Virus record (IMG/VR): IMGVR_UViG_3300034104_003795 | Coordinates: 62,001-126,000 of that record | Direction: 5' to 3' (one strand) | Length of the DNA stretch: 64,000 nt | Shown: piece after piece, positions 17,627 to 32,010 of the stretch | Layout of the letters: each line of letters begins with the position of its first letter | Numbering within the stretch: position 1 is the stretch's first letter | Translations under genes and position numbers: made by a program | Notes under the pieces: model-generated | What the model was told of the DNA's origin: nothing | Seen by the model: the letters and a program-made list of their open reading frames with translations, nothing else | Databases searched by the model: none

Positions 17627-19161
17627 TAACTATAAAATTTTCCTGACATTAAATTCTTTATAAATTGTTCCTGTGTTTGTAATAACTTAGCTCCTTCATC
17701 CGCACGTCTTATAATTTTAGTGTGTAGTTGTTTTGTATAATGTATAAGAGAATATTTTTTTAATGTATTAAATACTGCGGGTTTAGATAGAGTTTCCAAT
17801 CCGTACAATGTCCAACACCAAACACCCCAACCAGATGAACCATTGTAACTGGAAAAATCAAATGTAGAAGGACTTCTATATTTACAAATTTCTATGATAT
17901 TTTTTACAAAATCACTCATTGGTAATTCGTTATTACAAAACTTCCAAAATTCTGAATCATTTCGTTTATTATAGTAATGGATTCGTATTAGGTCTTTATA
18001 CTCATCTACCAGAGTTCCCATAACCTCATTGTATCGTTTTAAATTTTGTTCTAAAAAAAATTCTTTTTTATTTAAAGAAAAGAAATTACTGAATAACGTA
18101 TCAACTTGTAATAACGTTGTATGAATTGACGTAGCTTGAAGTGGTTCTAAAAATGAAGATGATAATCCTATCGCTACAACATTTTTAATCCAAAATTTAT
18201 CTAATCTACCTGGATCAAAACTTAATTTTCTTATCGGTTGTATTTTCCTACCAGTTGTTTTTTCCAATTCTTCAAGCGCCTTATCATCACTTACAAATTT
18301 ATCGCAATATACATAACCACATCCATATCTTTCTTGCGTTGGTATTTGCCACATCCAACCATTCGGCATTGACCAAGCCAAAGTTTCTAATTTAGCTTCT
18401 TCCGGTCCTTTTTCGTATTGATGTATATAAGGTAATGCGGAATTTACGGGAAGTTCATTTGAATAACTTATCCATTTTGCACCCATTTTATTAATTAACT
18501 TCTTATGAAATCCAGTACAATCTATCCAAAAGTCTGCCTCTAACGGAATTAAGTTACCTTCCAATTTTACGCTATCACATTCACCTGTTATTGGATTTAT
18601 ATTAACATCATCAACTTTAGCATCTATGTGTTTTACACCGTTTTCTATACAAACACTTTTAAAATATTCACCAACTTTATGGGCATCAAAGTGATAACCA
18701 TGTATACCCATATTTTCTTTACCGTTAATGTGATAATCCGATATTCCTCTGGACATAAAATGTCCCGCTATGGATGAATCATAAAAATTACCCTGCATAC
18801 AGGAAGCAAGAAATTCACTATCTACGTTATATCCCGCGGTTTCAGACGGTTGTATGGGACTTAAAAATTCAGTACCAACCCCATTCCAATCTTTAAAACG
18901 TATTCCGTATTTTGGCACTGCACGTGACCCTTTAAAAAAGTTAAATTCAGTTTTTTTCAAAGCAGAAAAACGAGTAGCTACCATTTGTTGCATTAACGCA
19001 GTAGTTCCTTCTCCGGCCCCGATAATTGGTATATCGGAACTTTCAATTACAGTAATATCTATTTGCTCTAATCTATCCTGTTTGTATAATTGGTTTTGAT
19101 TTGCAAAGAATGCCGCAGTCAACCAACCCGCTGTTCCCCCACCTACTATAACAATTTTCAT
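17626..19161 (-). CDS. flavin-dependent (tryptophan) halogenase family protein
   Basis: GGGTAG, IGAGEG, K-YGIRF (catalytic Lys position), GYHFDA, IDCTGF, WMWQIP (WxWxIP), EPLQATSI. Confidence 0.88.
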   Translation of the reverse strand: MKIVIVGGGTAGWLTAAFFANQNQLYKQDRLEQIDITVIESSDIPIIGAGEGTTALMQQMVATRFSALKKTEFNFFKGSRAVPKYGIRFKDWNGVGTEFLSPIQPSETAGYNVDSEFLASCMQGNFYDSSIAGHFMSRGISDYHINGKENMGIHGYHFDAHKVGEYFKSVCIENGVKHIDAKVDDVNINPITGECDSVKLEGNLIPLEADFWIDCTGFHKKLINKMGAKWISYSNELPVNSALPYIHQYEKGPEEAKLETLAWSMPNGWMWQIPTQERYGCGYVYCDKFVSDDKALEELEKTTGRKIQPIRKLSFDPGRLDKFWIKNVVAIGLSSSFLEPLQATSIHTTLLQVDTLFSNFFSLNKKEFFLEQNLKRYNEVMGTLVDEYKDLIRIHYYNKRNDSEFWKFCNNELPMSDFVKNIIEICKYRSPSTFDFSSYNGSSGWGVWCWTLYGLETLSKPAVFNTLKKYSLIHYTKQLHTKIIRRADEGAKLLQTQEQFIKNLMSGKFYS

Positions 19162-23214: not shown

Positions 23215-23230
23215 ATTATTAAGTTGTTTG

Positions 23231-23311
23231 TGCCCCAAGAGAGATTCGAACTCTCACACCTCTCGATATCAGTTCCTAAAACTGATGTGTCTACCGTTCC
23301 ACCATCAGGGC
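23231..23311 (-). tRNA. tRNA-Leu(TAG)
   Basis: Cloverleaf, anticodon arm tcagt-ttTAGga-actga, long variable arm. Confidence 0.93.
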
Positions 23312-23839
23312 ATATTTTTGTAATGATTTTAAAAATAATTCAATTCCTTTGTTGTGATTAGCTTCCCAATCATCCGGATTACCGCTATCACTTACATATT
23401 TGTATGCAGTAAAATCAAATCCATAAATCTTACATACCTTTGCAATTGAGTATGCTTCCATATCACATATTACAGATGGTGTGGTTTGAAAATGGTCTTG
23501 TGTATAACATATATTATATCCCAATCCATTGAAATCAATATTACCCATCAATATTTCATTATCAAATGGTGTTTTTGTTTTATCTGCAAATGGTCTAGCG
23601 TCCATATCGTTTTGGACAAATGTTTTACACTTAAATAAACTACCAACCATAACGGCATGCCCACCCGCACTTCCGTAGTTTATAACTACTACATCTTTGG
23701 GGTCTAAATCTTTAAGAGTTTCAGTTGCTTTTATAGCCGCATTTACTTTTCCAACACCAGTATAAACAACTTTAACACCTTCCGGTGCTTTTTCCTTTGG
23801 AAACTCATTTTCTAATGCAACAAATAATATAACGTTCAT
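23291..23839 (-). CDS. mtnN: MTA/SAH nucleosidase-like phosphorylase
   Basis: TGVGKVNAA, INYGSAGG, Q.DMD, CDMEAY, KYVSD; last 21 nt run into tRNA-Leu. Confidence 0.8.
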   Translation of the reverse strand: MNVILFVALENEFPKEKAPEGVKVVYTGVGKVNAAIKATETLKDLDPKDVVVINYGSAGGHAVMVGSLFKCKTFVQNDMDARPFADKTKTPFDNEILMGNIDFNGLGYNICYTQDHFQTTPSVICDMEAYSIAKVCKIYGFDFTAYKYVSDSGNPDDWEANHNKGIELFLKSLQKYALMVER

Positions 23840-23850
23840 AACAATAAGTA

Positions 23851-24023
23851 TGCTGTTAGAGTAGGATTCGAACCATACAGGAGGAGATTCAAAAAGTAAC
23901 ATTTAGTGCTTGCAAGCTGGTGGTCAACCCCATATTACTTTTCTATTTCTTTATCCTCGCCCACGAGACGAGTGGGTGTGTTTGCCAGGTTATAACATAG
24001 ATAACCAATTTCACCATCTAACA
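23851..24023 (-). ncRNA. giant tRNA-like RNA (GTC anticodon, D-loop hairpin insertion, ~80 nt branched variable arm)
   Basis: Acceptor TGTTAGA/TCTAACA-G, D arm GTGAAATT..GGCAAACAC, anticodon arm cccac-tcGTCtc-gtggg, T loop GGTTCGAATCC. Confidence 0.75.
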
Positions 24024-24028
24024 ATTTT

Positions 24029-24115
24029 TGCGGAGAAACAGGGATTCGAACCCCAGAACCTGTTACAGTTGCCGGTTTTCAAGACCGGTGCATTCAACCA
24101 CTCTGCCATTTCTCC
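24029..24115 (-). tRNA. tRNA-Ser(TGA)
   Basis: ccggt-ctTGAaa-accgg, long variable arm. Confidence 0.93.
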
Positions 24116-24132
24116 GTTAAGTACTCTAATAA

Positions 24133-24396
24133 TTAGAATACTTTTTCTTCGCTTTTACCGTCTAAACTATTTTCGGTATCGGCATGCTTTCTTCTAGCTT
24201 CTTCTGCTTCTTTATATATTCTAACCCAAGTTAAGAATATATCTACTGGCGCTAATATCCAACACATAATCAATAGAGCCATAGAATCTAATCCAGGTGA
24301 AATACCTAATCCACCAGCCATTACATCTCTATTCCATTTTCGTATTGACATTATAACACAATAGATGAAACACATTACATAATAAGTAATAAACAT
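24133..24396 (-). CDS. small membrane protein
   Basis: Two hydrophobic segments, located between tRNAs. Confidence 0.65.
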   Translation of the reverse strand: MFITYYVMCFIYCVIMSIRKWNRDVMAGGLGISPGLDSMALLIMCWILAPVDIFLTWVRIYKEAEEARRKHADTENSLDGKSEEKVF

Positions 24397-24415
24397 AACA
24401 TTTGTTTTTAATGAG

Positions 24416-24487
24416 TTACCCGAACTGGACTCGAACCAATACGAACAGAATCAAAATCTGTGATGCTAACCATTACATCATCGGGCA
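24416..24487 (-). tRNA. tRNA-Gln(TTG)
   Basis: acaga-ttTTGat-tctgt. Confidence 0.9.
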
Positions 24488-24492
24488 ATAAT

Positions 24493-24565
24493 CTCAAGCA
24501 TTCTACTTCCCGCAGTGCGAAATTGTATCTTACTTAGCCCATCGCTAGCGGTATGGGTACTTGAG
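24493..24565 (-). ncRNA. candidate structured small RNA between tRNA-Gly and tRNA-Gln
   Basis: Closing stem CTCAAGTA/TGCTTGAG with internal CCCAT/ATGGG hairpin. Confidence 0.4.
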
Positions 24566-24623
24566 TTTTAGTAATTGAAAAACATCTATTCTTCTTGCGG
24601 CCTAATACTAACAGGCCCACTTG

Positions 24624-24696
24624 AGCGAGAGACCAGGCTCGAACTGGCCACCTGAAGCTTGGAAGGCTACCGCTCTACCAAATGAGCTACTCTCGC
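24624..24696 (-). tRNA. tRNA-Gly(TCC)
   Basis: Loop ctTCCaa; near-duplicate body of the adjacent Gly(GCC). Confidence 0.9.
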
Positions 24697-24751
24697 TAAA
24701 GAGTGTAGTGGAAGATATCATTCCTGCAGTTACTACACGTTTTATCTGCTT

Positions 24752-24827
24752 TGGAGCGGAAGACCAGGCTCGAACTGGCCACCCTGACCTTGGCAAGGTC
24801 ATGCTCTACCAAATGAGCTACTTCCGC
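24752..24827 (-). tRNA. tRNA-Gly(GCC)
   Basis: tgacc-ttGCCaa-ggtca, encoded CCA. Confidence 0.93.
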
Positions 24828-24884
24828 AATTAATAGGTGAGGCTATTACCATCATTAAGTCTTTAATGCTTTAGACACCTATTG

Positions 24885-24958
24885 TGGACCCACTTGGAAT
24901 CGAACCAAGCACCTAATGATTATGAGTCATTTGCTCTAACCGAATGAGCTATAGGTCC
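24885..24958 (-). tRNA. tRNA-Ile2(CAT, lysidine type)
   Basis: aatga-ctCATaa-tcatt, G1-C72 acceptor resembling ileX; the Ile2 versus Met assignment is inferred. Confidence 0.8.
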
Positions 24959-24962
24959 GATG

Positions 24963-25036
24963 TGGAGAAGAAGGGATTCGAACCCATGACCCCCTGCGTG
25001 CAAGGCAGGTGCTCTAGCCAACTGAGCTACTTCCCC
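24963..25036 (-). tRNA. tRNA-Ala(TGC)
   Basis: cctgc-ctTGCac-gcagg, G3.U70. Confidence 0.93.
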
Positions 25037-25047
25037 ATAAGTGAACG

Positions 25048-25133
25048 TACCGGGGATGGGATTCGAACCCACACGAGCGATTTCTGCTCAAAAGATTTTA
25101 AGTCTTTCATGTCTACCATTCCATCACCCCGGC
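25048..25133 (-). tRNA. tRNA-Leu(TAA)
   Basis: aaaga-ctTAAaa-tcttt, long variable arm. Confidence 0.93.
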
Positions 25134-25158
25134 GGCGATACTATTTTTAATAACTATA

Positions 25159-25190
25159 CAAAGATACGAATAATAATTTAATTATCCAAA
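25159..25190 (-). promoter_or_regulatory. Bacteroidota sigma-A type promoter internal to the tRNA array
   Basis: TTTG-N20-TATCTTTG. Confidence 0.75.
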
Positions 25191-25627
25191 TCCTTTTTTA
25201 TATTATATATTTTAACCCTTCTGATTTTAGTTCCACTCTCATCAGGATTAATTAATATATCAATTTTTTTTCTCCACCTCTTTGCCATCAAATCTCTGAC
25301 AGTATAAACACCATCTAATTTTCCAGCACCCTTCACTCTTACTTTTTGTCCAAACTTATACTTTCGTTTCAGGTCTCTACTAATCGCTATTACCTTTTGT
25401 TTCTTTGGATTAAGACTATCCAACTTATAACCACTTGCGGTAATTAAGGGAGTTGAATCGGTTTGGCCGGCGGATACCGTATATGTTGTAACCGTAACTA
25501 CATCATAAGGTATGTGTTTCTTTTCTATCATTATATCCGCAACTTCTTCCTCACTCATTTCGGAGTCAATCATATTATGTGGAATAAACATAATAACAGT
25601 TAAGAATAAAAGAATAACTTTTCTCAT
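25178..25627 (-). CDS. 3D domain (MltA-B/RlpA-like) cell-wall protein
   Basis: Signal peptide; VTTY..QTDSTP.ITASG, IAISRDL, FGQKV, VRD.M, IDILI. Confidence 0.85.
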   Translation of the reverse strand: MRKVILLFLTVIMFIPHNMIDSEMSEEEVADIMIEKKHIPYDVVTVTTYTVSAGQTDSTPLITASGYKLDSLNPKKQKVIAISRDLKRKYKFGQKVRVKGAGKLDGVYTVRDLMAKRWRKKIDILINPDESGTKIRRVKIYNIKKDLDN

Positions 25628-25645
25628 AACTTATTTTTTATTTAG

Positions 25646-25719
25646 TGATTCGGAAAGGATTCGAACCTTTGACCCCAAACTTAGAAGGTTTGTGCTCTAT
25701 CCAGCTGAGCTACCGAACC
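25646..25719 (-). tRNA. tRNA-Arg(TCT)
   Basis: caaac-ctTCTaa-gtttg. Confidence 0.93.
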
Positions 25720-25722
25720 ATA

Positions 25723-25821
25723 TAGTAAGAGAGATACTACGTCTAATATCTCAATGTTTCTACCGGCCGTCTATGGAATATGCGCACTGACCATAAACTA
25801 AACTTTCGTCTGCTCTTACTA
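25723..25821 (-). ncRNA. candidate multibranch small RNA between tRNA-Asp and tRNA-Arg
   Basis: 9 bp closing stem TAGTAAGAG/CTCTTACTA plus three internal hairpins. Confidence 0.45.
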
Positions 25822-25825
25822 CTTG

Positions 25826-25896
25826 CGGAAAGTACGGGAATCGAACCCGTCACATTGCCGTGACAAGGCAACATTATACCGATTAACTAACTCTCC
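25826..25896 (-). tRNA. tRNA-Asp(GTC)
   Basis: ttgcc-ttGTCac-ggcaa, G73. Confidence 0.9.
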
Positions 25897-25925
25897 AAAT
25901 TACATTATCGTTCTTTAACTAATTT

Positions 25926-26183
25926 TTATTTTTTATTGTTAGTTAATTTTTGTTCTAATTTATCCAATCTCGAATCTAATTGAGAAAAGATGTGATTTTC
26001 TAATTCATCTGCTCTACGATTAAAGTCAGTTTGATTTCTATCAACTTGACGATACAAATCTTCGCCGATGCTTTCTAATTCTTTTTCTATTTTTCTTGCC
26101 TTAACAAGCCCAATAACAGCAACTATCGACACTGCGATAACCACCACTACAGACATTCCTAAAACGAATGATAATATTTCCAT
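25926..26183 (-). CDS. membrane-anchored coiled-coil protein
   Basis: N-terminal TM helix plus ...SQLDSRLDKLE; flanked by 15 bp inverted repeat. Confidence 0.7.
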   Translation of the reverse strand: MEILSFVLGMSVVVVIAVSIVAVIGLVKARKIEKELESIGEDLYRQVDRNQTDFNRRADELENHIFSQLDSRLDKLEQKLTNNKK

Positions 26184-26220
26184 AATTTATTTCTCCTATA
26201 TGTCAAAGAACGATAATGTG

Positions 26221-26293
26221 AGCCCAAGACAAGAATCGAACTTGCGACCTACTGATTACAAATCAGTTGCTCTACCTGCTGAGCTACTCGGGC
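26221..26293 (-). tRNA. tRNA-Thr(TGT)
   Basis: actga-ttTGTaa-tcagt. Confidence 0.93.
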
Positions 26294-26297
26294 GTTT

Positions 26298-26391
26298 AGG
26301 AAAGTAGAAGATGGGTGCGTGGACATCTACTTTTATGATTGGCATTTCTAACCGATTTATGCATACTAATATGCTTATCCCAATCAACCTT
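26298..26391 (-). ncRNA. candidate structured small RNA between tRNA-Glu and tRNA-Thr
   Basis: TGATTGG/CCAATCA, GCATA/TATGC and AAAGTAG/CTACTTT stems. Confidence 0.35.
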
Positions 26392-26393
26392 TG

Positions 26394-26465
26394 TACTCTG
26401 TACGGGATTCGAACCCGTATTACATCCGTGAAAGGGATGTGACCTAACCCTTAGTCGAACAGAGC
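26394..26465 (-). tRNA. tRNA-Glu(TTC)
   Basis: catcc-ctTTCac-ggatg. Confidence 0.93.
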
Positions 26466-26483
26466 GTTAATGTTAATGTTATA

Positions 26484-26515
26484 CAAATATACGAATAATA
26501 TCTGATATAACCAAA
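26484..26515 (-). promoter_or_regulatory. Bacteroidota sigma-A type promoter internal to the tRNA array
   Basis: TTTG-N20-TATATTTG. Confidence 0.75.
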
Positions 26516-26521
26516 TCTATT

Positions 26522-26665
26522 TTAACAATAGGTTTTATATTTTTTTATACCACCTTTCAAACGTCTTATACATATCATACAAGCTCCGTTTTCTCTTATT
26601 ATTTTTCTTATTCGGTATAACTTATTACTTCGTCTATTAATTTCAAACTTATCATTTTTCATAAT
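26522..26665 (-). CDS. small basic hypothetical protein
   Basis: Start trimmed to approximately MKNDKFE to clear tRNA-Ser. Confidence 0.35.
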   Translation of the reverse strand: MMKNDKFEINRRSNKLYRIRKIIRENGACMICIRRLKGGIKKYKTYC

Positions 26666-26678
26666 GTCCAATTTAATG

Positions 26679-26767
26679 CGGAGAATGTTGGATTCGAACC
26701 AACGGTACAACTTTCATCGTACAACGGTTTAGCAAACCGGCCCCATCGTCCACTCGGGCAATTCTCC
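26679..26767 (-). tRNA. tRNA-Ser(GCT)
   Basis: Loop ttGCTaa, long variable arm. Confidence 0.9.
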
Positions 26768-26771
26768 GTTG

Positions 26772-26844
26772 GGGTGTAAGGACGGTATCGAACCGTCTTA
26801 TCTAGCTCCACAAACTAGCGCATCACCTTAATGCTTCAAACACC
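26772..26844 (-). tRNA. tRNA-His(GTG)
   Basis: ctagt-ttGTGga-gctag, G-1/C73. Confidence 0.9.
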
Positions 26845-26847
26845 ATT

Positions 26848-26919
26848 TGGTTGCGGGGCCAGGAATCGAACCTGAATATCTGGCTTATGAGACCAAACGG
26901 ATTACCTAATCTCCCCACA
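26848..26919 (-). tRNA. tRNA-Met(CAT) with shortened D arm
   Basis: TGTGGGG/CCCCGCA-A-CCA, loop ctCATaa, D arm only GATT-AGGT-AATC. Confidence 0.75.
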
Positions 26920-26927
26920 ATATCAAG

Positions 26928-26998
26928 AGGCGAGTACAAGATTCGAACTTGTGTAAAAGCTTTTGCAGAGCTCCATATAACCACTCTAACAACTCGCC
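26928..26998 (-). tRNA. tRNA-Cys(GCA)
   Basis: gagct-ctGCAaa-agctt, U73. Confidence 0.92.
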
Positions 26999-27004
26999 AT
27001 TTTG

Positions 27005-27077
27005 TAGCCCCTAAAGGATTCGAACCCATACTCCGAAGTCCGTAGCTTCGTGTGCTAATCCATTACACCAAAGAGCC
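27005..27077 (-). tRNA. tRNA-Arg(ACG)
   Basis: cgaag-ctACGga-cttcg. Confidence 0.92.
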
Positions 27078-27081
27078 ATAG

Positions 27082-27152
27082 CACCGGTGGAAGGACTCGA
27101 ACCCTCACAAACAGTTTTGGAGACTGGTATGCTACCATTACACTACACCGAT
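27082..27152 (-). tRNA. tRNA-Trp(CCA)
   Basis: Loop ctCCAaa, G73. Confidence 0.9.
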
Positions 27153-27158
27153 ATATTG

Positions 27159-27232
27159 TTGGAATAAAAAGAATCGAACTTTTAACCTTCCGCGTATCAG
27201 ACGGATGCTCTAACCAATTGAGCTATATTCCA
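27159..27232 (-). tRNA. tRNA-Ile(GAT)
   Basis: tccgt-ctGATac-gcgga. Confidence 0.9.
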
Positions 27233-27280
27233 ATTTTGCACTTCCTATTTCCCAATGCTGTGTAGTGCGAACCATATCGG

Positions 27281-27354
27281 TTGGGAATGCAGGATTCGAA
27301 CCTACGGCCTCTAGCTCCCAAAGCTAGCGCGATACCTGACTACGCTAATTCCCA
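27281..27354 (-). tRNA. tRNA-Pro(TGG)
   Basis: ctagc-ttTGGga-gctag. Confidence 0.92.
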
Positions 27355-27429
27355 ATGTGATAAGTTTCCATCCTATCGTATAATGTGTACATCATTATTT
27401 TAACTCAATATTAAGTTCGGAACTTTTTG

Positions 27430-27503
27430 TGACCCCTAATGGATTCGAACCATTGACTCCTATATTAAAAGTATAGTGCTCTAACCAACTGAGCTAAGAG
27501 GTC
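27430..27503 (-). tRNA. tRNA-Lys(TTT)
   Basis: ctata-ctTTTaa-tatag. Confidence 0.93.
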
Positions 27504-27543
27504 TGACTTTTGTCATACTTGTCACTTTCCATAGTATTTGTTT

Positions 27544-27753
27544 TTAATTGTTATCTTCTAATTCTATTTTACAATATTCGTCCAATGATATTTTATCAAA
27601 TGTTATCCATTGTCCATTTCCAAAATCTACTGCGAACTTACCATCTTCTGGTAGATACGCAGTTACTATTCCTTTACTACCCATTTCAATTTTTCCTTTT
27701 GGTGTCACCAACTCTTTTATTAATGTACCAACTCCATGATTAAAATCTGCCAT
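27544..27753 (-). CDS. small SH3/beta-barrel-like hypothetical protein
   Basis: 69 aa ORF between tRNAs. Confidence 0.65.
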   Translation of the reverse strand: MADFNHGVGTLIKELVTPKGKIEMGSKGIVTAYLPEDGKFAVDFGNGQWITFDKISLDEYCKIELEDNN

Positions 27754-27775
27754 AATTGTTTTTTTAATTGTTAAG

Positions 27776-27848
27776 TGGTAATGAGTGGTATCGAACCACT
27801 TCCTAAAGATTTTCAGTCTTTCGCTTCTACCTAGTTAGCTTCATCACC
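27776..27848 (-). tRNA. tRNA-Phe(GAA)
   Basis: aaaga-ctGAAaa-tcttt. Confidence 0.92.
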
Positions 27849-27852
27849 GGTG

Positions 27853-27934
27853 TTGGGGTAGACGGACTCGAACCGCCGAACTCAAATGAGAGCTGATTTA
27901 CAGTCAGCCGCAATTGCCACTATGCGATACCCCA
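27853..27934 (-). tRNA. tRNA-Tyr(GTA)
   Basis: gctga-ctGTAaa-tcagc, long variable arm. Confidence 0.93.
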
Positions 27935-27939
27935 ATGGC

Positions 27940-28033
27940 GTTCCATATAACTCACATTTGATAGCCCTATCGTGCTACTCACTCAATCCTACAACAGCTT
28001 TCAACTGAGAGATTGTAGGAATGTGTATGGAAC
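27940..28033 (-). ncRNA. candidate three-way-junction small RNA between tRNA-Val and tRNA-Tyr
   Basis: GTTCCATA/TATGGAAC, CACATT/AATGTG, CCTACAA/TTGTAGG, CAGTT-GAAA-GCTG. Confidence 0.45.
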
Positions 28034-28039
28034 ATGTTG

Positions 28040-28114
28040 TGGAAGTTACAGGATTCGAACCTATGACCCTCACGGTGTAAACGTGATGCTCTAAACCAAC
28101 TGAGCTAAACTTCC
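28040..28114 (-). tRNA. tRNA-Val(TAC)
   Basis: tcacg-ttTACac-cgtga. Confidence 0.93.
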
Positions 28115-28122
28115 TACTTATC

Positions 28123-28140
28123 CAATATGTCAAAGAACTT
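28123..28140 (-). promoter_or_regulatory. rrn boxA-like antitermination element
   Basis: AAGTTCTTTGACATATTG just after the first tRNA of the array; related copies at 26197-26211, 29536-29547, 30018-30029. Confidence 0.55.
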
Positions 28141-28147
28141 AATCTTG

Positions 28148-28219
28148 CGCTCCCTCTTGGATTCGAACCAAGGACCAACAGATTAACAGTCTGCTGCGCT
28201 ACCGCTGCGCCAAAGGAGC
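28148..28219 (-). tRNA. tRNA-Asn(GTT)
   Basis: gcaga-ctGTTaa-tctgt. Confidence 0.93.
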
Positions 28220-28221
28220 TT

Positions 28222-28262
28222 AAAACGAAAAAACCTCTAACCGATTTTATTCAGTTAGAGGT
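28222..28262 (-). terminator. intrinsic terminator / attenuator directly upstream of tRNA-Asn
   Basis: ACCTCTAACTG-aataaaat-CGGTTAGAGGT followed by TTTTTCGTTTT. Confidence 0.8.
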
Positions 28263-28288
28263 CTTTCTATTTAAGTTAAGTTATGTAA

Positions 28289-28450
28289 TTACCCAACATC
28301 AGTGTCCTCTAACTGCTTCGTACTAATATAATCCACCTTGCCTAAATTTAAGTTTGCCGGATTACTTAACGTACTAAACATACGAATCCCAGCCCACTCA
28401 TTTCTCAATGTAGGTTGCGAACAATTTGTATGTAGTGTTAAAGTTTTCAT
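28289..28450 (-). CDS. putative attenuator leader peptide (53 aa, all 20 amino acids)
   Basis: MKTLTLHTNCSQPTLRNEWAGIRMFSTLSNPANLNLGKVDYISTKQLEDTDVG; codons 46-49 (CAGTTAGAGG) are the exact complement of the terminator 5' arm. Confidence 0.65.
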   Translation of the reverse strand: MKTLTLHTNCSQPTLRNEWAGIRMFSTLSNPANLNLGKVDYISTKQLEDTDVG

Positions 28451-28600
28451 CACTGTTTGTTTATATAAGTATATAATAATTTTATTTTCCGAATCTTTGT
28501 TAGTTTTATCAGGCTTAAATTGGGGAACATATTGATATGCCCCCCTTTTCAAGTTGTAATAAAAATTAAGATATGAAACGAACAACTTTTCAGTTGTTAG

Positions 28601-28646
28601 TAGCTCTCTCTATTGGAATCGAACCAATATGCAACCATTGAGAAAG
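28601..28646 (-). ncRNA. tRNA-like minihelix (acceptor stem plus T arm, no anticodon arm)
   Basis: CTTTCTC/GAGAGAG stem, ATTGG-TTCGATT-CCAAT T arm, 11-nt linker containing TGG. Confidence 0.5.
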
Positions 28647-28659
28647 TAAAAACGCTGAG

Positions 28660-29520
28660 AATATACGTTGGGATAACTAGCTTTAGAAAGATTATTTTGT
28701 TTCCTTTCGTTTCCACATCCTTTTGAGATGTACCAGTCAATGCAGGTTATTATAGATTAACCACTCTTAAAGTTGTAACTTACTCACCTATTACTCCCCT
28801 TATTCAATCCTGCCGAACTGATTAAACCTTGCGGGTCTATAAGCTTTTCGTAGATATCACATTCGCCTTGCGGGCGTTTGTGGCTGGGAACAACTCCCAA
28901 CTATGTATGCACCTTTCGGTCACAACTGATGAACACTTTTGCTTTTATTTATAATTGAATAATCAAATCCGCATTTGATAAAAGTTTTGGTTCGTAGATG
29001 GATTCAGGTAGCGGTTCACCACTAGCTCTGTCCCCTTTTGAAGAACAGAATACTATACTACCCGATGCGTTATCTCAACGCCATACTTCAAGTCATCTTC
29101 ATTAATAGGGATTGGTGTCCCATATTAAAGGATAGTAACGGCACCACCCGTACACAGTCTTATCTTACGTCCTTTCGGATAGCTTGATTGTCAAGACCAC
29201 TTTGGTATTGAATCACGCAATAATAAAAAGGGATTAGCTTTCTATTTCTTACAATAATCCTATGAGTTATTCTTATCGTTCTTCCGAACTCAACTGAACA
29301 ATCTACAATTGCTCAGTCACCCAAACTCTTCTGCTACAGTGTTACCCTCACATACAAAGCCCAAATGATATCTCACTTGCCTACTCAAGCTCATAACCTT
29401 ACAGGGATATGAACCGCAAAATGCTTAACCAAACATTTCACTTTATCCTACTTTCGTAGTTTATTTAATGACCATAGGCGGCCATTTTGTACACTATATA
29501 ACACGAAGTTATTATGTGTA
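28660..29520 (-). ncRNA. large structured ncRNA, GOLLD-like (~860 nt)
   Basis: No minus-strand ORF >=60 aa in the track, higher GC, many GNRA-capped hairpins (CTAC-GAAA-GTAG, TCC-GAAA-GGA, ACC-GAAA-GGT, two GCAA loops), own promoter, next to phage tRNA cluster; family name not confirmed by a covariance search. Confidence 0.7.
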
Positions 29521-29564
29521 AATTATTTCAATAATGTAAAGAACTTTGTTATTTGATAACTTTA

Positions 29565-29596
29565 TAAAGATACGAAATCTTTTTCAAACTACCAAA
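29565..29596 (-). promoter_or_regulatory. Bacteroidota-type promoter (array unit 1; drives the GOLLD-like RNA)
   Basis: TTTGGTAGTTTGAAAAAGATTTCG-TATCTTTA. Confidence 0.8.
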
Positions 29597-29606
29597 TTTA
29601 TTTTTA

Positions 29607-29663
29607 AAGATTCTCAATTTTGTTTTCTGGTCAAACCAATCAACTACTTTATTTTTGAATCTT
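29607..29663 (-). ncRNA. candidate small RNA 1 of the promoter array
   Basis: Starts just after its promoter; ends pair (AAGATTC/GAATCTT). Confidence 0.45.
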
Positions 29664-29665
29664 CA

Positions 29666-29697
29666 TAAAGATACGATAATTTTTTCAAACTACCAAA
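29666..29697 (-). promoter_or_regulatory. Bacteroidota-type promoter (array unit 2)
   Basis: TTTG-N20-TATCTTTA. Confidence 0.8.
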
Positions 29698-29708
29698 TCT
29701 TTTTTTAA

Positions 29709-29791
29709 AAGTTATTAAGGTATCCGGCTTTATTAGGAGCTTGCGCCCCTCACACAATCGGTTTTATTATTGTTGGCTTCAACCTTAACTT
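29709..29791 (-). ncRNA. candidate small RNA 2 of the promoter array
   Basis: Closing stem AAGTTAAGG/CCTTAATAACTT; internal GGGGC-GCAA-GCTCC GNRA hairpin. Confidence 0.55.
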
Positions 29792-29794
29792 TGT

Positions 29795-29826
29795 TAAAGA
29801 TACGAAAGTTTTTTCAAACTACCAAA
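29795..29826 (-). promoter_or_regulatory. Bacteroidota-type promoter (array unit 3)
   Basis: TTTG-N20-TATCTTTA. Confidence 0.8.
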
Positions 29827-29836
29827 TCTTTTTTTA

Positions 29837-29934
29837 AATCTATTATAATGGGGTTGGGTTGTACCCTTTTCAATCTGCTTTCACACCCATCACTCCCAAA
29901 GAGCTGTCAGTATCAGATACCACTATTATAGATT
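29837..29934 (-). ncRNA. candidate small RNA 3 (co-transcribed after tRNA-fMet)
   Basis: Long closing stem AATCTATAATAGTGG/CCATTATAATAGATT. Confidence 0.5.
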
Positions 29935-29937
29935 TTG

Positions 29938-30009
29938 TTGCGAGGGATGGATTCGAACCACCGGCCTCCAGGTTATGAGCCTGGCGAGCTACCACTGCTC
30001 TACCTCACG
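29938..30009 (-). tRNA. tRNA-fMet(CAT), initiator
   Basis: C1:A72 mismatch, ccagg-ctCATaa-cctgg. Confidence 0.9.
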
Positions 30010-30030
30010 ATATTATTTTAAAGAACTTTG

Positions 30031-30062
30031 TAAAGATAGTACATTTTTTTGAAACGGCCAAA
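30031..30062 (-). promoter_or_regulatory. Bacteroidota-type promoter for tRNA-fMet
   Basis: TTTG-N20-TATCTTTA followed by a boxA-like element. Confidence 0.75.
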
Positions 30063-30093
30063 TCTTTTTTTCAAAATGTGGATAACTTTTTTA

Positions 30094-30118
30094 ATTCATT
30101 GATTATCAATGAGTTACG
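30094..30118. repeat. palindromic repeat copy
   Basis: attcattgattatcaatgagttacg. Confidence 0.7.
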
Positions 30119-30142
30119 CACATAAGAATTTATAAGTATATG

Positions 30143-30174
30143 TAAATATACAAAAAATATACGAATCCGCCAAA
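30143..30174 (-). promoter_or_regulatory. Bacteroidota-type promoter
   Basis: TTTG-N20-TATATTTA. Confidence 0.65.
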
Positions 30175-30181
30175 TTTATTT

Positions 30182-30457
30182 TTAAACTAATGCGTTCAGC
30201 TTATTAAGTACCAATTCTCTTACTGAATTAAAAAGTTCTTCCGTATCAGTTTGGAATAATGGCGCCGAACCAACCGGTCTATCACTACCGGATATTTCAG
30301 ACATTGCGTGTTCATATACAGCTCTAAATGCCATTGGGTCTTTTGTATATGCAATAGCAGAGTTATCAACTCTGGATGAATTAGTAATTGAAATTATCGT
30401 TTTTTCTTCATCATCAAAGCAGATATGGCTTTCGCCGGTTACAACATAAGTTTTCAT
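30182..30457 (-). CDS. hypothetical protein
   Basis: 91 aa ORF. Confidence 0.7.
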   Translation of the reverse strand: MKTYVVTGESHICFDDEEKTIISITNSSRVDNSAIAYTKDPMAFRAVYEHAMSEISGSDRPVGSAPLFQTDTEELFNSVRELVLNKLNALV

Positions 30458-30475
30458 AATATATTAATTAATTTT

Positions 30476-31069
30476 TTAACAATAGTATTCTACTGCATAA
30501 GTATATAAAGGTTCACCACTCCATATTGGATTTACTTCTGCATATCTTTGGTATCCAGCTGGGTCACATCCCCAATAGATGATATTTCCGCGAATCGGAC
30601 TATATACTGCTTTATAAGTAGTTTTCCAATAATTACCCCATCCAAAATGATTCCATAAGAAAGTAATTCTATCATCCATTCTAGCAGGAGCCGCAGGACC
30701 ATTAGAACCATCGCCACCATTAGATGCGTCATGCCAAGGGCCTATATTATAAAAATACCATCTCTCACTCCACTCAGCTGCACCATACACATTATATTTG
30801 TAAAGTCTGATACTGCAACTCGCTTGGCTTTCATATTTGAATATGTAAACGTATGGTCTACTTGCACTATGCGTATATCCCCACCAATGAGAAAATGCAT
30901 ATCCACTCTGCCCATTGGCAGTTGGTCTATAACTACTTGCATCATTTATACCACCATAACTACCATTTCTAGCGTCCCATATGGTAAAGTATCCACCTCT
31001 ATTGAATTCGGTATTTATATCGGATGCTGCGATTGTACCGCCTACTATATATCGTAACCTATCTGGCAT
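30476..31069 (-). CDS. putative virion/tail-associated protein
   Basis: GTIAASDINTEFNR..YAFSHWWGYTHS N-terminal motif typical of tail-fibre-associated modules; rich in Gly and aromatic residues. Confidence 0.45.
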   Translation of the reverse strand: MPDRLRYIVGGTIAASDINTEFNRGGYFTIWDARNGSYGGINDASSYRPTANGQSGYAFSHWWGYTHSASRPYVYIFKYESQASCSIRLYKYNVYGAAEWSERWYFYNIGPWHDASNGGDGSNGPAAPARMDDRITFLWNHFGWGNYWKTTYKAVYSPIRGNIIYWGCDPAGYQRYAEVNPIWSGEPLYTYAVEYYC

Positions 31070-31072
31070 ATC

Positions 31073-31798
31073 TTATTTAGATTTTTGCATAATCTTTACC
31101 AATGACATTGCACTCTTTTTAACAGGAGCATCATCTTGATATCTAAGCGCAGATTGTACTTTTATATCTCTACCGGTTTCAGGATTTCTTACAGTTTTAT
31201 TAAGAATATCCTTTGGTAACATTTTGATTAATTTATCATCTCTTTCTGCAGATGATCCTGGTAAATTTTGTAAATTTCTTTGTGTACCTTTTTTTCTTTG
31301 AAATGCGAAAACTTGTTTGGTATTTCTCATTTTTGAATATGCTTGCTGCATTGTACCAGGATGCATATCCCCAACACTTTCTACTCTACCATTTTTATAA
31401 ACCAAAACACCTTTACCTTTGGTATCTTCGCCACCATACAAAACTGAATCCTGTGTGAATTCATTTCCTAATTGGTGAATATCTTTAATTGAAATGTTTG
31501 GAACGAATAAGGAAATTTCGGTTGAATCAACTAATTTATCTTTTGGACAATCAAAATAGTTTACTCTATTATCTTGACACTCTTGCCAATGACCTTCCAT
31601 CTCAAAAAATCCTAATCCTTTAGCTCTTATTTTATCCGCTAATATTTTGTTAGCCGCTTTATTTTCAGCAGGAGTATTTGCATATCTATAAGCAGTTATA
31701 ACTCCCCAACTTTTTACCTTCTTTTTACCTTGAACGTGTTGGAGAACCCTACCCAGTGAGGCTTCAGTTAGTTGTGCTATTTTACATCCTTTTTCCAT
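31073..31798 (-). CDS. conserved phage protein (DUF3293-like) with C-terminal NPETGRDIKVQSAL module
   Basis: E.SLGRV.QH, ITAYR, N...N..L, GHWQE, QDSVL. Confidence 0.6.
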   Translation of the reverse strand: MEKGCKIAQLTEASLGRVLQHVQGKKKVKSWGVITAYRYANTPAENKAANKILADKIRAKGLGFFEMEGHWQECQDNRVNYFDCPKDKLVDSTEISLFVPNISIKDIHQLGNEFTQDSVLYGGEDTKGKGVLVYKNGRVESVGDMHPGTMQQAYSKMRNTKQVFAFQRKKGTQRNLQNLPGSSAERDDKLIKMLPKDILNKTVRNPETGRDIKVQSALRYQDDAPVKKSAMSLVKIMQKSK

Positions 31799-32010
31799 TC
31801 CTTATATATTTCATTAGATAAATATATAGAATCGTGGAAATGAATCTTTTCCTGAACCTTTGCTAGCTTTTCTTTTAAAGAATCAAGTTTGGTTTGTCTA
31901 GCCCATTTTCCCATATTATTTACAGGTGGATAGGCTTCCCAATATGCAAGTTGTTCTTGCAATTCTTTTTCCCTAATCTTTAGCTTTACTATTTTCTCAT
32001 TTATTTCCAT
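31777..32010 (-). CDS. coiled-coil hypothetical protein
   Basis: First gene after promoter 32018-32049. Confidence 0.65.
   Translation of the reverse strand: MEINEKIVKLKIREKELQEQLAYWEAYPPVNNMGKWARQTKLDSLKEKLAKVQEKIHFHDSIYLSNEIYKEWKKDVK

What the first reader, a model, noticed from the sequence alone, without database searches (positions are those of the whole stretch)
28660..29520. ~860 nt GOLLD-like large ncRNA at the head of the RNA island
Seen: a long ORF-free, GC-enriched stretch rich in GNRA hairpins, with its own promoter and boxA-like leader. Established: GOLLD RNAs (~800 nt) occur in phages and prophages next to tRNA clusters, assemble into RNA-only multimeric cages, and have no known function. 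Inference: this is a GOLLD RNA from a Bacteroidota phage. Its position upstream of a translation-sensing leader and a complete tRNA set suggests a role in RNA protection or translation stress.
Basis: partly seen in the sequence, partly recalled or inferred. Interest (0 to 1): 0.65.

Follow-up and report, generated by a model that had tools for sequence, protein, structure and literature searches.

The report
GOLLD giant RNA in lake phage
This stretch is a genuine gene for GOLLD, a known 830-base phage RNA that folds into a hollow RNA-only cage and has no known function; it sits in a 274-kb freshwater phage, is very abundant in lake RNA samples, and is built like a ribosomal-RNA operon.

Summary
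Rfam's GOLLD model matches end to end at window 29065..28652 on the MINUS strand (306.8 bits; cut-off 150). The more variable 5' domain extends the conserved RNA to about 29485, giving 834 nt. These are the same borders as env-38, the GOLLD whose 14-mer cage was solved by cryo-EM. 104 full-length relatives in viral contigs support the fold: 144 of 180 consensus pairs show compensatory changes, and the window keeps 207 of 215 pairs. ROOL does not match.

In four freshwater metatranscriptomes, contigs on 28562..29546 are about 100 to 1000 times deeper than the flanks. They end at 28653, where the model ends.

The flanks add features I did not find described for GOLLD:
- a Bacteroidota-type promoter;
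- a boxA-like box (GTTCTTTA), conserved in 50 of 54 lineages;
- a conserved leader hairpin;
- a tRNA-like minihelix directly 3' of GOLLD, where relatives carry a full tRNA, often the initiator tRNA.

I infer rrn-style antitermination, 3'-end formation by RNase P, cage assembly, and a role in translation take-over. None of these steps is shown. The host is probably in Bacteroidota. Verdict: a new member of a known kind, in an informative context.

The parts
28652..29485 (-). GOLLD RNA, conserved structured core (834 nt)
   Evidence: Rfam hit. nhmmer finds end-to-end matches to 104 viral homologs. Borders are the same as those of the env-38 construct. The consensus fold has 144 of 180 pairs with compensatory changes, and the window keeps 207 of 215 consensus pairs.
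28652..29065 (-). 3' domain, the part covered by Rfam RF02032. It includes the hairpin loops I take for L21a (CGCAA, 28833-28829) and L21b (GGCA, 28814-28811).
   Evidence: model positions 1-416 of 416, 306.8 bits, E 6.9e-87. The loop sequences CCGCAAGG and UCGGCAGG are identical to env-38. In the family the first loop switches between GC and CG, as described for L21a.
29066..29485 (-). 5' domain, env-38 type. It includes the P11a-like hairpin with a GAAA loop (29176-29173).
   Evidence: Alignments A1 and A2. A 30-nt motif from this domain has more than 120 exact matches in IMG/VR. The GAAA loop corresponds to L11a of env-38.
28937..29003 (-). Variable A/U-rich linker between the domains, with a small variable hairpin and no embedded tRNA
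   Evidence: Unaligned, variable columns of the Rfam alignment and of A2. No tRNA is called here.
29489..29520 (-). Conserved leader hairpin with an AUA/AUA internal loop, just 5' of the core
   Evidence: MFE -7.2 kcal/mol, z -2.1. The inner stem covaries in 14 relatives: 4 of 5 pairs have compensatory changes. An RNA contig of a relative runs at least 15 nt into this leader (loose end at 29482).
29534..29544 (-). boxA-like element GTTCTTTACAT in the GOLLD leader
   Evidence: The motif GTTCTTT[AG]A is present upstream of 50 of 54 dereplicated GOLLDs, against a background of 0.086 per kb. Published consensus: GYTCTTTAANA (PMC5725501) and UGCUCUUUAACA / AUGAUCUUUGAAA (PMC13753749).
29560..29617 (-). 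Promoter-like unit P4 directly upstream of GOLLD (-33 TTTG at 29596-29593; -7 TATCTTTA at 29572-29565)
   Evidence: Reference copy of direct-repeat family D1. The same extended motif recurs across the genome with a perfect TAnnTTTG and is enriched on the sense strand. The start site is inferred, not mapped.
29661..30195 (-). Four further copies of the 58-nt promoter-like unit (29661-29718, 29790-29847, 30026-30083, 30138-30195)
   Evidence: 62-83% identity to the reference copy.
29937..30009 (-). Initiator-type tRNA-Met(CAT), preceded by the boxA-like GTTCTTTAAAA at 30026-30016
   Evidence: ARAGORN and Rfam. It has a C1:A72 mismatch, an A11-type D stem (GAGC), GG:CC at the base of the anticodon stem, and a CUCAUAA loop. 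boxA.
28603..28646 (-). tRNA-like minihelix: a 7-bp acceptor-like stem stacked on a 6-bp T-like stem with loop UUCGAUU. It has no D arm and no anticodon arm.
   Evidence: The MFE structure is exactly this fold, -10.9 kcal/mol, z -1.7. In 7 sequences there are 13 pairs, 3 with compensatory changes. It aligns to the full tRNA that follows GOLLD in LR756502 and LR745206. ARAGORN and the Rfam tRNA model do not call it.
28228..28267 (-). Strong terminator-like hairpin followed by U6, just before tRNA-Asn
   Evidence: -22.5 kcal/mol, z -7.2; 0 of 200 shuffles fold as well.
23230..28219 (-). Array of 25 tRNAs downstream, with two further boxA-like boxes (GTTCTTTGACATAT at 28138 and 26211)

Best explanation
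This is a GOLLD RNA gene of the env-38 type. It lies on the minus strand (about 29485 to 28653) of a 274-kb freshwater jumbo phage that probably infects a member of Bacteroidota.

Shown:
- family membership;
- homology and covariation over the full length;
- a discrete, very abundant RNA in natural lake samples, with its 3' end at the model's end.

Inferred, with my estimate of how likely each step is:
1. Host RNA polymerase starts at a Bacteroidota-type promoter about 70 nt upstream (0.7).
2. The boxA-like box in the leader loads host NusB/S10. The polymerase then resists Rho and terminators across about 7 kb of untranslated GOLLD plus tRNA genes, as in an rRNA operon, and may also help the RNA fold (0.55).
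3. RNase P cuts 5' of the tRNA-like minihelix, and the U-rich tail is trimmed back to the last helix. This frees the GOLLD 3' end (0.5).
4. The RNA self-assembles into a 14-mer cage like env-38, because the 5' cap domain and the loops I take for the two self-kissing loops are conserved (0.75).
5. The cage acts in the phage's take-over of translation, as a multivalent scaffold or sink for a component of the translation apparatus. The basis is its tight linkage to the initiator tRNA and to tRNA arrays (0.3).

The confidence given below refers to identity, borders and expression.
For: Identity:
- RF02032 matches positions 1-416 of 416 at 306.8 bits against a gathering score of 150. It is the only copy in the genome.

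Full length:
- 104 end-to-end homologs of 768-846 nt, forming 54 clusters at 90% identity.
- 144 of 180 consensus pairs have compensatory changes. The window forms 207 of 215 consensus pairs; the family median is 96%.
- The env-38 construct starts and ends at the same positions and shares long blocks in both domains, including the GAAA loop and both kissing-loop sequences.

Expression:
- Summed contig depth is 187-46,837 in bins 28562-29546. It is at most 76 in 29547-30137, about 10 or less in 28365-28561, and 0-15 in the coding flanks, in four RNA runs from four studies.
- Adapter sequence abuts contig ends at 28653 and 28656.

Transcription and processing:
- Promoter.
- boxA: present in 50 of 54 lineages at -19 to -121. 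Four copies lie in the 7-kb RNA island of this genome. Consensus.
- Minihelix. In 15 of 52 lineages a tRNA starts within 30 nt of the GOLLD end, and 10 more have a T-loop-like element. In the cultured Acinetobacter phage AM24 a tRNA starts 10 nt after GOLLD.

Initiator tRNA link:
- 21 of 54 lineages are flanked by one.
- 21 of the 24 initiator-type tRNAs in these loci are GOLLD neighbours, although this type makes up only 8% of all tRNAs there.
- In 10 lineages it is the only tRNA in the locus.

Host.
Against: - No start site was mapped, and the 5' end of the RNA is unresolved between 29486 and about 29546.
- The RNA evidence comes from assembled contigs at 90% likeness or more. Depth therefore pools GOLLDs of related phages, and it cannot show strand or exact ends beyond the adapter junctions.
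- The GOLLD-proximal box differs from GYTCTTTAANA at 2 of 11 positions (it keeps GTTCTTTA).
- I could not check what boxA looks like in Bacteroidota rRNA leaders.
- Acinetobacter phage GOLLD loci have no such box within 5 kb.
- The minihelix has only modest thermodynamic support (z -1.7), and its covariation rests on 7 sequences.
- About half of the lineages instead have a hairpin plus T-run or nothing recognisable after GOLLD.
- A weak hairpin plus UUUUU at 28652-28648 could itself terminate transcription.
- Cage assembly and every functional step are unmeasured.
Confidence: 0.85

Rival explanations
1. The RNA is a GOLLD, but its job is to counter host defence. The cage would be a decoy or sink for host nucleases that attack tRNAs or other phage RNAs, or a store that protects the phage tRNAs. 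It would not act on the translation machinery itself.
For: The context is the same: GOLLD sits inside a complete phage tRNA set. Abundance is very high, as expected of a stoichiometric decoy. Published ideas include encapsulation of tRNAs and 'inhibited storage' of embedded tRNAs.
Against: This GOLLD has no tRNA in its linker. The specific linkage is to the initiator tRNA, which is not a known target of anticodon nucleases (my knowledge). In 10 lineages GOLLD travels with that single tRNA only. No defence or anti-defence gene was tied to it here.
Confidence: 0.2
2. The 3' end at 28653 is made by intrinsic or factor-dependent termination at the last GOLLD hairpin and the U-run, not by RNase P. 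On this view the minihelix is a decaying tRNA pseudogene without function.
For: UUUUUA follows the last helix. Several relatives have clear hairpin plus T-run terminators after GOLLD instead of a tRNA. The tRNA models do not recognise the minihelix.
Against: The last helix is short and weak. The minihelix keeps exactly the acceptor and T arms through compensatory changes in at least four distinct sequence types, while the rest of the tRNA is gone. A tRNA or tRNA-like element lies within about 30 nt of the GOLLD end in 25 of 52 lineages.
Confidence: 0.3
3. The GTTCTTTA box is not a Nus-factor site. It would instead be part of the promoter or initial transcribed region, or a processing or protein-binding site specific to these phages.
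For: It lies very close to the predicted start, especially before the tRNA-Met. Its extended context (AGTTCTTTAA, then ATTATTGAAA) is conserved beyond the boxA core. It is absent from Acinetobacter phage GOLLD loci.
Against: The core is identical to the boxA core shared by E. coli and B. subtilis. The box recurs twice inside the tRNA array, far from any promoter-like unit; this recalls the second boxA inside rRNA operons. boxA is already known upstream of other long untranslated arrays such as CRISPR operons.
Confidence: 0.3
4. It is not GOLLD but ROOL or a new class of large RNA.
For: None found.
Against: GOLLD is matched at twice its threshold. No ROOL hit, and no other large-RNA family, appears at gathering scores over the whole window, nor at E up to 1 in 28150-30300.
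Confidence: 0.01

Closest known systems
GOLLD env-38 (marine metagenome; 14-mer D7 nanocage, PDB 9MEE; Kretsch et al., Nature 2025, PMC12286853)
   Same: The 5' and 3' borders and the length match (834 nt here; 833 nt in the solved structure). Both have the two-domain layout with a variable linker. Long identical blocks occur in both domains, including the GAAA loop of P11a and the CCGCAAGG and UCGGCAGG loops. Both lie downstream of a tRNA-Met.
   Different: The source differs: a freshwater jumbo phage with a full tRNA set. The linker and several peripheral stems differ in sequence. Assembly has not been measured here. I compared by eye only, because env-38 had no reference that I could align.
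Streptococcus agalactiae GOLLD (12-mer, PDB 9L0R) and other Lactobacillales and Mycobacterium GOLLDs
   Same: They share the Rfam 3' domain and the tRNA-array context.
   Different: The S. agalactiae RNA lacks P9, P11a-c and P21b and forms a 12-mer. The window RNA has the P11a-type hairpin and both P21 hairpins, so it groups with env-38. Mycobacterial GOLLDs carry a tRNA in the linker; this one does not.
ROOL RNA
   Same: It is also a large phage- or prophage-borne RNA near tRNA islands that forms an RNA-only cage.
   Different: Sequence and fold are unrelated, and no Rfam hit was found here.
rRNA operon leaders and boxA-controlled CRISPR arrays (NusB/S10 antitermination complexes)
   Same: They share a boxA core in the leader of a long untranslated transcription unit, co-transcribed tRNAs, a second box further inside the unit, and very high RNA output.
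   Different: This is a phage unit, and the product is neither rRNA nor crRNA. The box order (boxA, then hairpin) resembles lambda nut more than rrn. Binding by Nus factors is untested, and the Bacteroidota boxA was not checked.
MALAT1-mascRNA and MEN-beta 3' ends in vertebrates (RNase P cut at a tRNA-like structure); minihelix substrates of bacterial RNase P
   Same: A long stable non-coding RNA is followed at once by a tRNA-like fold that could direct RNase P to make its 3' end. The comparison itself rests on my own knowledge.
   Different: The system here is bacterial or phage. The element is reduced to the acceptor and T arms. Cleavage has not been shown.

Membership tests
GOLLD RNA (Rfam RF02032) | Score at or above the curated gathering score of the covariance model, over the whole model | tested here: met
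   306.8 bits against 150; model positions 1-416 of 416; not truncated; E 6.9e-87. Repeated.
GOLLD RNA (Rfam RF02032) | Two-domain architecture: a less conserved 5' domain, a variable linker, and a conserved 3' domain; total length above about 800 nt | tested here: met
   5' domain 29485-29066, linker about 29003-28937, 3' domain 29065-28652; 834 nt in all.
GOLLD RNA (Rfam RF02032) | Secondary structure supported by covariation across homologs, with the candidate fitting it | tested here: met
   54 dereplicated sequences give 180 consensus pairs, 144 with compensatory changes. The window forms 207 of 215 pairs of a second consensus.
GOLLD RNA (Rfam RF02032) | Phage or prophage location next to tRNA genes | tested here: met
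   The record is a 274-kb virus genome that encodes a large terminase. 26 tRNAs lie on the same strand.
GOLLD RNA (Rfam RF02032) | Expressed as a discrete RNA | tested here: met
   Four metatranscriptomes show sharp depth borders and adapter junctions at 28653 and 28656. This is contig-level evidence only.
GOLLD env-38 subtype (14-mer cage) | Presence of the elements that set env-38 apart from the 12-mer S. agalactiae GOLLD (P11a-c, P21b), and of the self-kissing loops L21a and L21b | tested here: inconclusive
   The P11a-like GAAA hairpin and both P21-region hairpins are present, with loop sequences identical to env-38. Assigning these hairpins to the published helix names is my inference. 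No computed alignment to env-38 was possible.
GOLLD env-38 subtype (14-mer cage) | Homo-oligomeric assembly into a closed cage | not testable with these tools
   This needs mass photometry or cryo-EM of the transcript.
ROOL RNA | Match to the Rfam ROOL model | tested here: not met
   No hit at gathering scores in the window, nor at E up to 1 in 28150-30300.
boxA / Nus-factor antitermination unit | boxA consensus in the transcribed leader | tested here: inconclusive
   GTTCTTTACAT (29544-29534) matches 9 of 11 positions of GYTCTTTAANA and all of the first eight. GTTCTTTAAAA (30026-30016) matches 11 of 11. The box is conserved in 50 of 54 lineages. Its position in the transcript depends on an unmapped start site, and the host's own boxA is unknown.
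boxA / Nus-factor antitermination unit | Binding of NusB-S10, and Rho or terminator read-through that depends on the box | not testable with these tools
A strong terminator-like hairpin (28267-28228) stands before tRNA-Asn with no promoter-like unit after it. This fits read-through but does not show it.
tRNA-like RNase P processing signal | Acceptor stem coaxial with a T stem-loop, conserved by covariation, directly 3' of the RNA end | tested here: met
   13 pairs, 3 with compensatory changes, loop UUCGAUU. The RNA contigs end 7 nt upstream of its first base.
tRNA-like RNase P processing signal | Cleavage by RNase P | not testable with these tools
   This needs an in-vitro cleavage assay or an RNase P depletion.

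The most novel reading that the evidence does not exclude
In this large freshwater clade, GOLLD units would be phage-borne imitations of rRNA operons. They would have strong host-type promoters, a boxA that recruits the host Nus antitermination and RNA-folding machinery, and RNase P release at a flanking tRNA or a stripped-down tRNA-like minihelix. They would also have an obligatory partnership with the initiator tRNA. On this reading the cage works together with the phage initiator tRNA to redirect translation initiation during infection. That would give GOLLD, whose function has been unknown since 2009, a concrete pathway.
Probability: 0.2. Interest if true: 0.8.

Novelty: new member of a known kind. 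Interest (0 to 1): 0.45.

Why it matters
GOLLD is one of the largest bacterial or phage non-coding RNAs, and its cage structure was solved in 2025. Yet nobody knows what it does or how it is made in cells. This locus adds no new class. It does show that an env-38-type GOLLD is one of the most abundant phage transcripts in several lakes.

Comparing 54 lineages also gives three handles that can be tested at the bench:
- a boxA-like antitermination signal in the leader;
- a tRNA or tRNA-like minihelix at the 3' end, a candidate RNase P signal;
- a strong linkage to the initiator tRNA.

I did not find these described for GOLLD in the papers I could search. In addition, cultured Acinetobacter phages such as AM24 carry unannotated GOLLD genes and could serve as a genetic system.

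Tried and rejected
- ROOL or any other Rfam family for the region: no match.
- Sigma-70-type promoters and simple terminators: 12 promoter-like sites against 9.5 +/- 2.5 expected, so not informative. The only 'terminator' found lies inside a GOLLD stem.
- Fetching env-38 for a computed alignment: its 35-nt signature has no exact match in JGI metagenome contigs. The published sequence has no reference, so I compared by eye only and left the computed alignment out.
- Prophage copies that would name a host: the 30-nt 5'-domain motif has no exact match in 185,579 species genomes.
- A bacterial genome handle via a phage sugar epimerase, wanted to inspect Bacteroidota rRNA leaders: no relative found. 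The host's own boxA therefore stays unchecked, and two paper searches for it gave nothing usable.
- Cultured relatives by terminase (Flavobacterium phage immuto, Microcystis phage Mel-JY01): neither has a GOLLD.
- boxA in Acinetobacter phage GOLLD loci: none within 5 kb, so the box is not universal to GOLLD.
- The minihelix as a true tRNA: not called by ARAGORN or by the Rfam tRNA model at E up to 1.
- Pfam on the ORFs around and inside the RNA island: mostly nothing.
- A literature link between GOLLD and the initiator tRNA: none found; the three hits were unrelated plant papers.
- The count of structure pairs on the 965-column alignment: not run, because it would have needed a long typed structure string.
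- No alternative genetic code was used.
Full report
**What is there.**
A scan of the whole window against Rfam gives one large hit besides 26 tRNAs. It is GOLLD (RF02032) at 29065..28652 on the minus strand, covering model positions 1-416 of 416 at 306.8 bits (gathering score 150, E 6.9e-87). A more permissive scan of 28150-30300 adds nothing else of note and gives no ROOL hit.

The Rfam model covers only the conserved 3' domain. Alignment with the GOLLDs of two 630-640-kb uncultured phages (LR756502, LR745206) shows that strong conservation starts at about 29484. nhmmer with 29484..28652 as query finds 104 end-to-end homologs of 768-846 nt among IMG/VR contigs. Those contigs were fetched with a 30-nt motif from the 5' domain that has more than 120 exact matches.

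The construct used for the cryo-EM structure of GOLLD env-38 is printed in the supplement of Kretsch et al. (PMC12286853). It begins ATGGCCGC and ends at the TTCTCAGC motif. These are the positions 29485 and 28652 of the window. By eye it shares long blocks with the window RNA in both domains. The gene is therefore 29485..28652/3, 834 nt, minus strand. It is the only GOLLD in a 273,997-bp virus record that CheckV rates complete.

**Check of the observation.**
- The stretch has no ORF of 80 aa or more on either strand from 28586 to 30181.
- It is 39.0% G+C against 33.3% for the genome.
- Its sense strand carries several GNRA tetraloops on covariation-supported stems.
- The strand was not stated.
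- 'Head of the island' is slightly off, since a tRNA-Met lies 452 nt upstream.

**Structure.**
I clustered the 104 homologs at 90% identity into 54 lineages, which are 53-89% identical to the window RNA. RNAalifold on these gives 180 consensus pairs, of which 144 show at least one compensatory double change. They are spread over both domains. With a second consensus (215 pairs) the window RNA forms 207 canonical pairs, or 96%, equal to the family median.

The window belongs to the subset that has an extra hairpin with a GAAA loop (29176-29173). This matches the env-38 loop L11a, which the authors single out. Two hairpin loops of the 3' domain, CCGCAAGG (loop 28833-28829) and UCGGCAGG (loop 28814-28811), are identical to env-38. 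In the family the first of them switches between a GC and a CG core. That is what was reported for the self-kissing loop L21a, which joins the two half-shells. The assignment of these hairpins to the published helix names is my inference.

A review notes that P11a-c and P21b distinguish the 14-mer env-38 from the 12-mer S. agalactiae GOLLD. On that basis I expect a 14-mer here, but nothing was measured.

**Expression.**
The 4-kb stretch around the gene is held near-identically in lake and freshwater DNA metagenomes of more than a dozen studies, and partly in six metatranscriptomes. I laid the contigs of four RNA runs from four studies on 26001-31900 at 90% likeness or more.

| Region | Summed contig depth |
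|---|---|
| Five bins, 28562-29546 (GOLLD) | 187 to 46,837 |
| 29547-30137 | at most 76 |
| 28365-28561 | about 10 or less |
| Coding flanks | 0-15 |

Contigs stop at 28653 (X17) and 28656 (X16) and continue there into Illumina adapter sequence. This marks a very frequent fragment end, and it lies at the last base of the Rfam model.

At the other side, contigs of a relative run at least 15 nt past 29482 into a leader that matches locus L106. The abundant RNA therefore keeps at least part of the leader, and the 5' end is not resolved.

Caveats:
- These are assemblies, not reads.
- Depth pools related phages.
- The strand is not shown.
- The tool itself warns against ranking genes by depth.

The contrast of two to three orders of magnitude, with borders that coincide with the gene, is still hard to explain by DNA carry-over.

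**Upstream flank.**
A 58-nt unit occurs five times between 29560 and 30195. Each copy has TTTG, a spacer of about 20 nt, and TATCTTTA. Elsewhere in the genome the same extended motif ends in a perfect TAnnTTTG. The strict pattern TTTG-N18-21-TAnnTTTG occurs 41 times on the gene-sense strand, 8 times on the other strand, and 5.5 +/- 1.9 times in first-order simulations. This is the promoter layout I know from Bacteroides and Flavobacterium (own knowledge). The copy nearest to GOLLD would start transcription near 29558.

Between it and the core lie two elements:
- the box GTTCTTTACAT (29544-29534);
- a hairpin with a symmetric AUA/AUA internal loop (29520-29489; z -2.1).

Both are conserved in relatives. 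The heptamer GTTCTTT is invariant in the 14 closest leaders, and the inner stem of the hairpin covaries. Across all 54 lineages, 50 have GTTCTTT[AG]A within 150 nt upstream, mostly at -49 to -96. The rate elsewhere in the same loci is 0.086 per kb.

The box has the core of boxA, the RNA site of NusB-S10:
- GYTCTTTAANA for gamma-proteobacteria (PMC5725501);
- UGCUCUUUAACA in E. coli and AUGAUCUUUGAAA in B. subtilis (PMC13753749).

In this genome, boxA-like boxes in non-coding sequence on the sense strand lie at four places:
- behind the promoter-like unit before the tRNA-Met (30026, 11 of 11 matches);
- in the GOLLD leader (29544);
- twice inside the tRNA array as GTTCTTTGACATAT (28138, 26211).

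That it loads Nus factors is inference. The logic is that about 7 kb of untranslated RNA is a natural Rho target, and that boxA is used for this purpose in rRNA operons and CRISPR arrays. A very stable terminator-like hairpin (28267-28228; -22.5 kcal/mol; z -7.2) stands directly before tRNA-Asn, with no promoter-like unit behind it. This fits a read-through design but does not prove it. Acinetobacter phage GOLLDs, which sit inside tRNA arrays without a promoter of their own, have no such box within 5 kb.

**Downstream flank.**
In LR756502 and LR745206 a tRNA begins about 10 nt after GOLLD. The window aligns there with only the ends of a tRNA. The 44 nt at 28646..28603 fold into a 7-bp acceptor-like stem stacked on a 6-bp T-like stem with loop UUCGAUU (MFE structure). 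In seven sequences of at least four distinct sequence types the acceptor-like stem changes by compensatory substitutions, from CUUUCUC/GAGAGAG to UAUCAU/AUGAUA and UUAUCUA/UAGAUAA. The T arm and a spacer AAUGGUU stay fixed.

Of 52 lineages with enough downstream sequence:
- 15 have a tRNA called within 30 nt of the GOLLD end;
- 10 more have only a T-loop-like element;
- many of the rest show a hairpin plus T-run (by eye).

In the cultured Acinetobacter phage AM24 the Rfam hit ends at locus position 2640 and tRNA-Asp starts at 2650.

Acceptor-plus-T-arm minihelices are classical RNase P substrates, and vertebrate MALAT1 gets its 3' end this way (own knowledge). I therefore propose that RNase P cuts between 28647 and 28646, and that the UUUUUA tail is trimmed to the observed end at 28653. 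The rival is termination at the weak last hairpin plus U-run.

**Link to the initiator tRNA.**
The tRNA-Met upstream (30009..29937) has a C1:A72 mismatch, an A11-type D stem, GG:CC at the base of the anticodon stem, and a CUCAUAA loop. This is the bacterial initiator pattern (criteria from my knowledge). In the 104 loci, 41 of 50 GOLLD-adjacent tRNA-Met genes have the 1:72 mismatch.

In the dereplicated set:
- 21 of 54 lineages have an initiator-type tRNA within 30 nt downstream (8 lineages) or within 600 nt upstream (13 lineages).
- 21 of the 24 initiator-type tRNAs in these loci are the GOLLD neighbours, although this type makes up only 8% of the 292 tRNAs.
- In 10 lineages it is the only tRNA in the locus.

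env-38 is also described as lying downstream of a Met-tRNA. I found no paper that links GOLLD with the initiator tRNA. The library searched is incomplete, and the original 2009 description was not read.

**Host and phage.**
All but a few ORFs are on the minus strand (241 against 24 ORFs of 100 aa or more). The window holds auxiliary genes: a tryptophan halogenase, glycosyltransferases, a sugar epimerase, AAA ATPases and a SAM-lyase-family protein. The large terminase is closest to Flavobacterium phage vB_FspM_immuto (57.5% aa), then to Microcystis phage Mel-JY01 (55.3%). Neither has a GOLLD. Together with the promoter statistics this makes a host in Bacteroidota likely, but it is not shown.

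**How it most likely works.**
- Shown: a GOLLD of the env-38 type, expressed as a discrete and very abundant RNA.
- Inferred: a host-type promoter; boxA-dependent antitermination over GOLLD and the tRNA array; 3' release by RNase P at the minihelix; self-assembly into a 14-mer cage; a role in the take-over of translation, suggested by the partnership with the initiator tRNA and the rrn-like design.

I put the last step at about 0.3. A decoy or storage role against tRNA-directed host defence is the main rival, at 0.2. The rest is open.

**Novelty and score.**
The finding as written is a new member of a known family in its known context, so it is not novel as a class. The flank features and the abundance data are, as far as I could see, new observations about the family, and they are testable. 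Interest is 0.45.

Noticed in passing
window 29560-30195: There are five copies of a 58-nt promoter-like unit in 640 bp. Two of them (29661-29718, 29790-29847) are followed by only about 60-80 nt of unique sequence before the next copy. One of these short segments (about 29660-29606, minus strand) is conserved in relatives L023, L018 and L020. It may be a small RNA or a regulatory spacer.
   Followed up: partly
window 28603-28646 (minus): A tRNA-like minihelix (acceptor stem plus T arm only) sits where relatives carry a full tRNA. It is conserved with compensatory changes, and the tRNA finders do not call it.
   Followed up: yes
54 GOLLD lineages in loci L001-L123; window 29937-30009: Initiator-type tRNA-Met is the preferred neighbour of this GOLLD clade. 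21 of 54 lineages have one next to GOLLD, and 21 of the 24 initiator-type tRNAs in the loci are GOLLD neighbours. In 10 lineages it is the only tRNA nearby.
   Followed up: yes
window 28128-28138 and 26201-26211 (minus): Two further boxA-like boxes with an identical extended sequence (GTTCTTTGACATAT) lie inside the tRNA array, one after tRNA-Asn and one after tRNA-Thr. This recalls the internal boxA of rRNA operons.
   Followed up: partly
window 28228-28450 (minus): A 53-codon ORF (28450-28289; no Pfam match for the longer 98-aa frame) is followed by a very stable hairpin plus U6 (28267-28228; -22.5 kcal/mol; z -7.2), right before tRNA-Asn. A weak, sub-threshold NsiR1 hit (23 bits against 39) lies on the hairpin and is likely chance.
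   Followed up: partly
L129 (Acinetobacter phage AM24, KY000079.2) 2272-2640; L130 (vB_AciJM_313, PX050566.1) 2261-2644: Cultured Acinetobacter phages carry GOLLD genes (215 and 207 bits) in unannotated gaps of their tRNA arrays. They could serve as a laboratory system for GOLLD genetics.
   Followed up: partly
window 29307-29439: RNA contigs in three runs skip 89 nt (29350-29438), and one skips 131 nt. The flanking sides are short (26-34 nt). These are most likely GOLLDs of related phages with a shorter peripheral hairpin, as seen in the family alignment, and not splicing.
   Followed up: no
window 26198-26394: The bin holding tRNA-Thr has a summed depth of 54-340 in the RNA runs, far above the other tRNA bins. 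Joints in the contigs suggest cross-matching with tRNAs of other organisms.
   Followed up: no
window 31073-31798, 17626-19161, 23291-23902 (all minus): Auxiliary genes lie near the RNA island: a SAM-lyase-family protein just upstream of the island, a tryptophan halogenase, and a phosphorylase-superfamily ORF inside the tRNA array.
   Followed up: no
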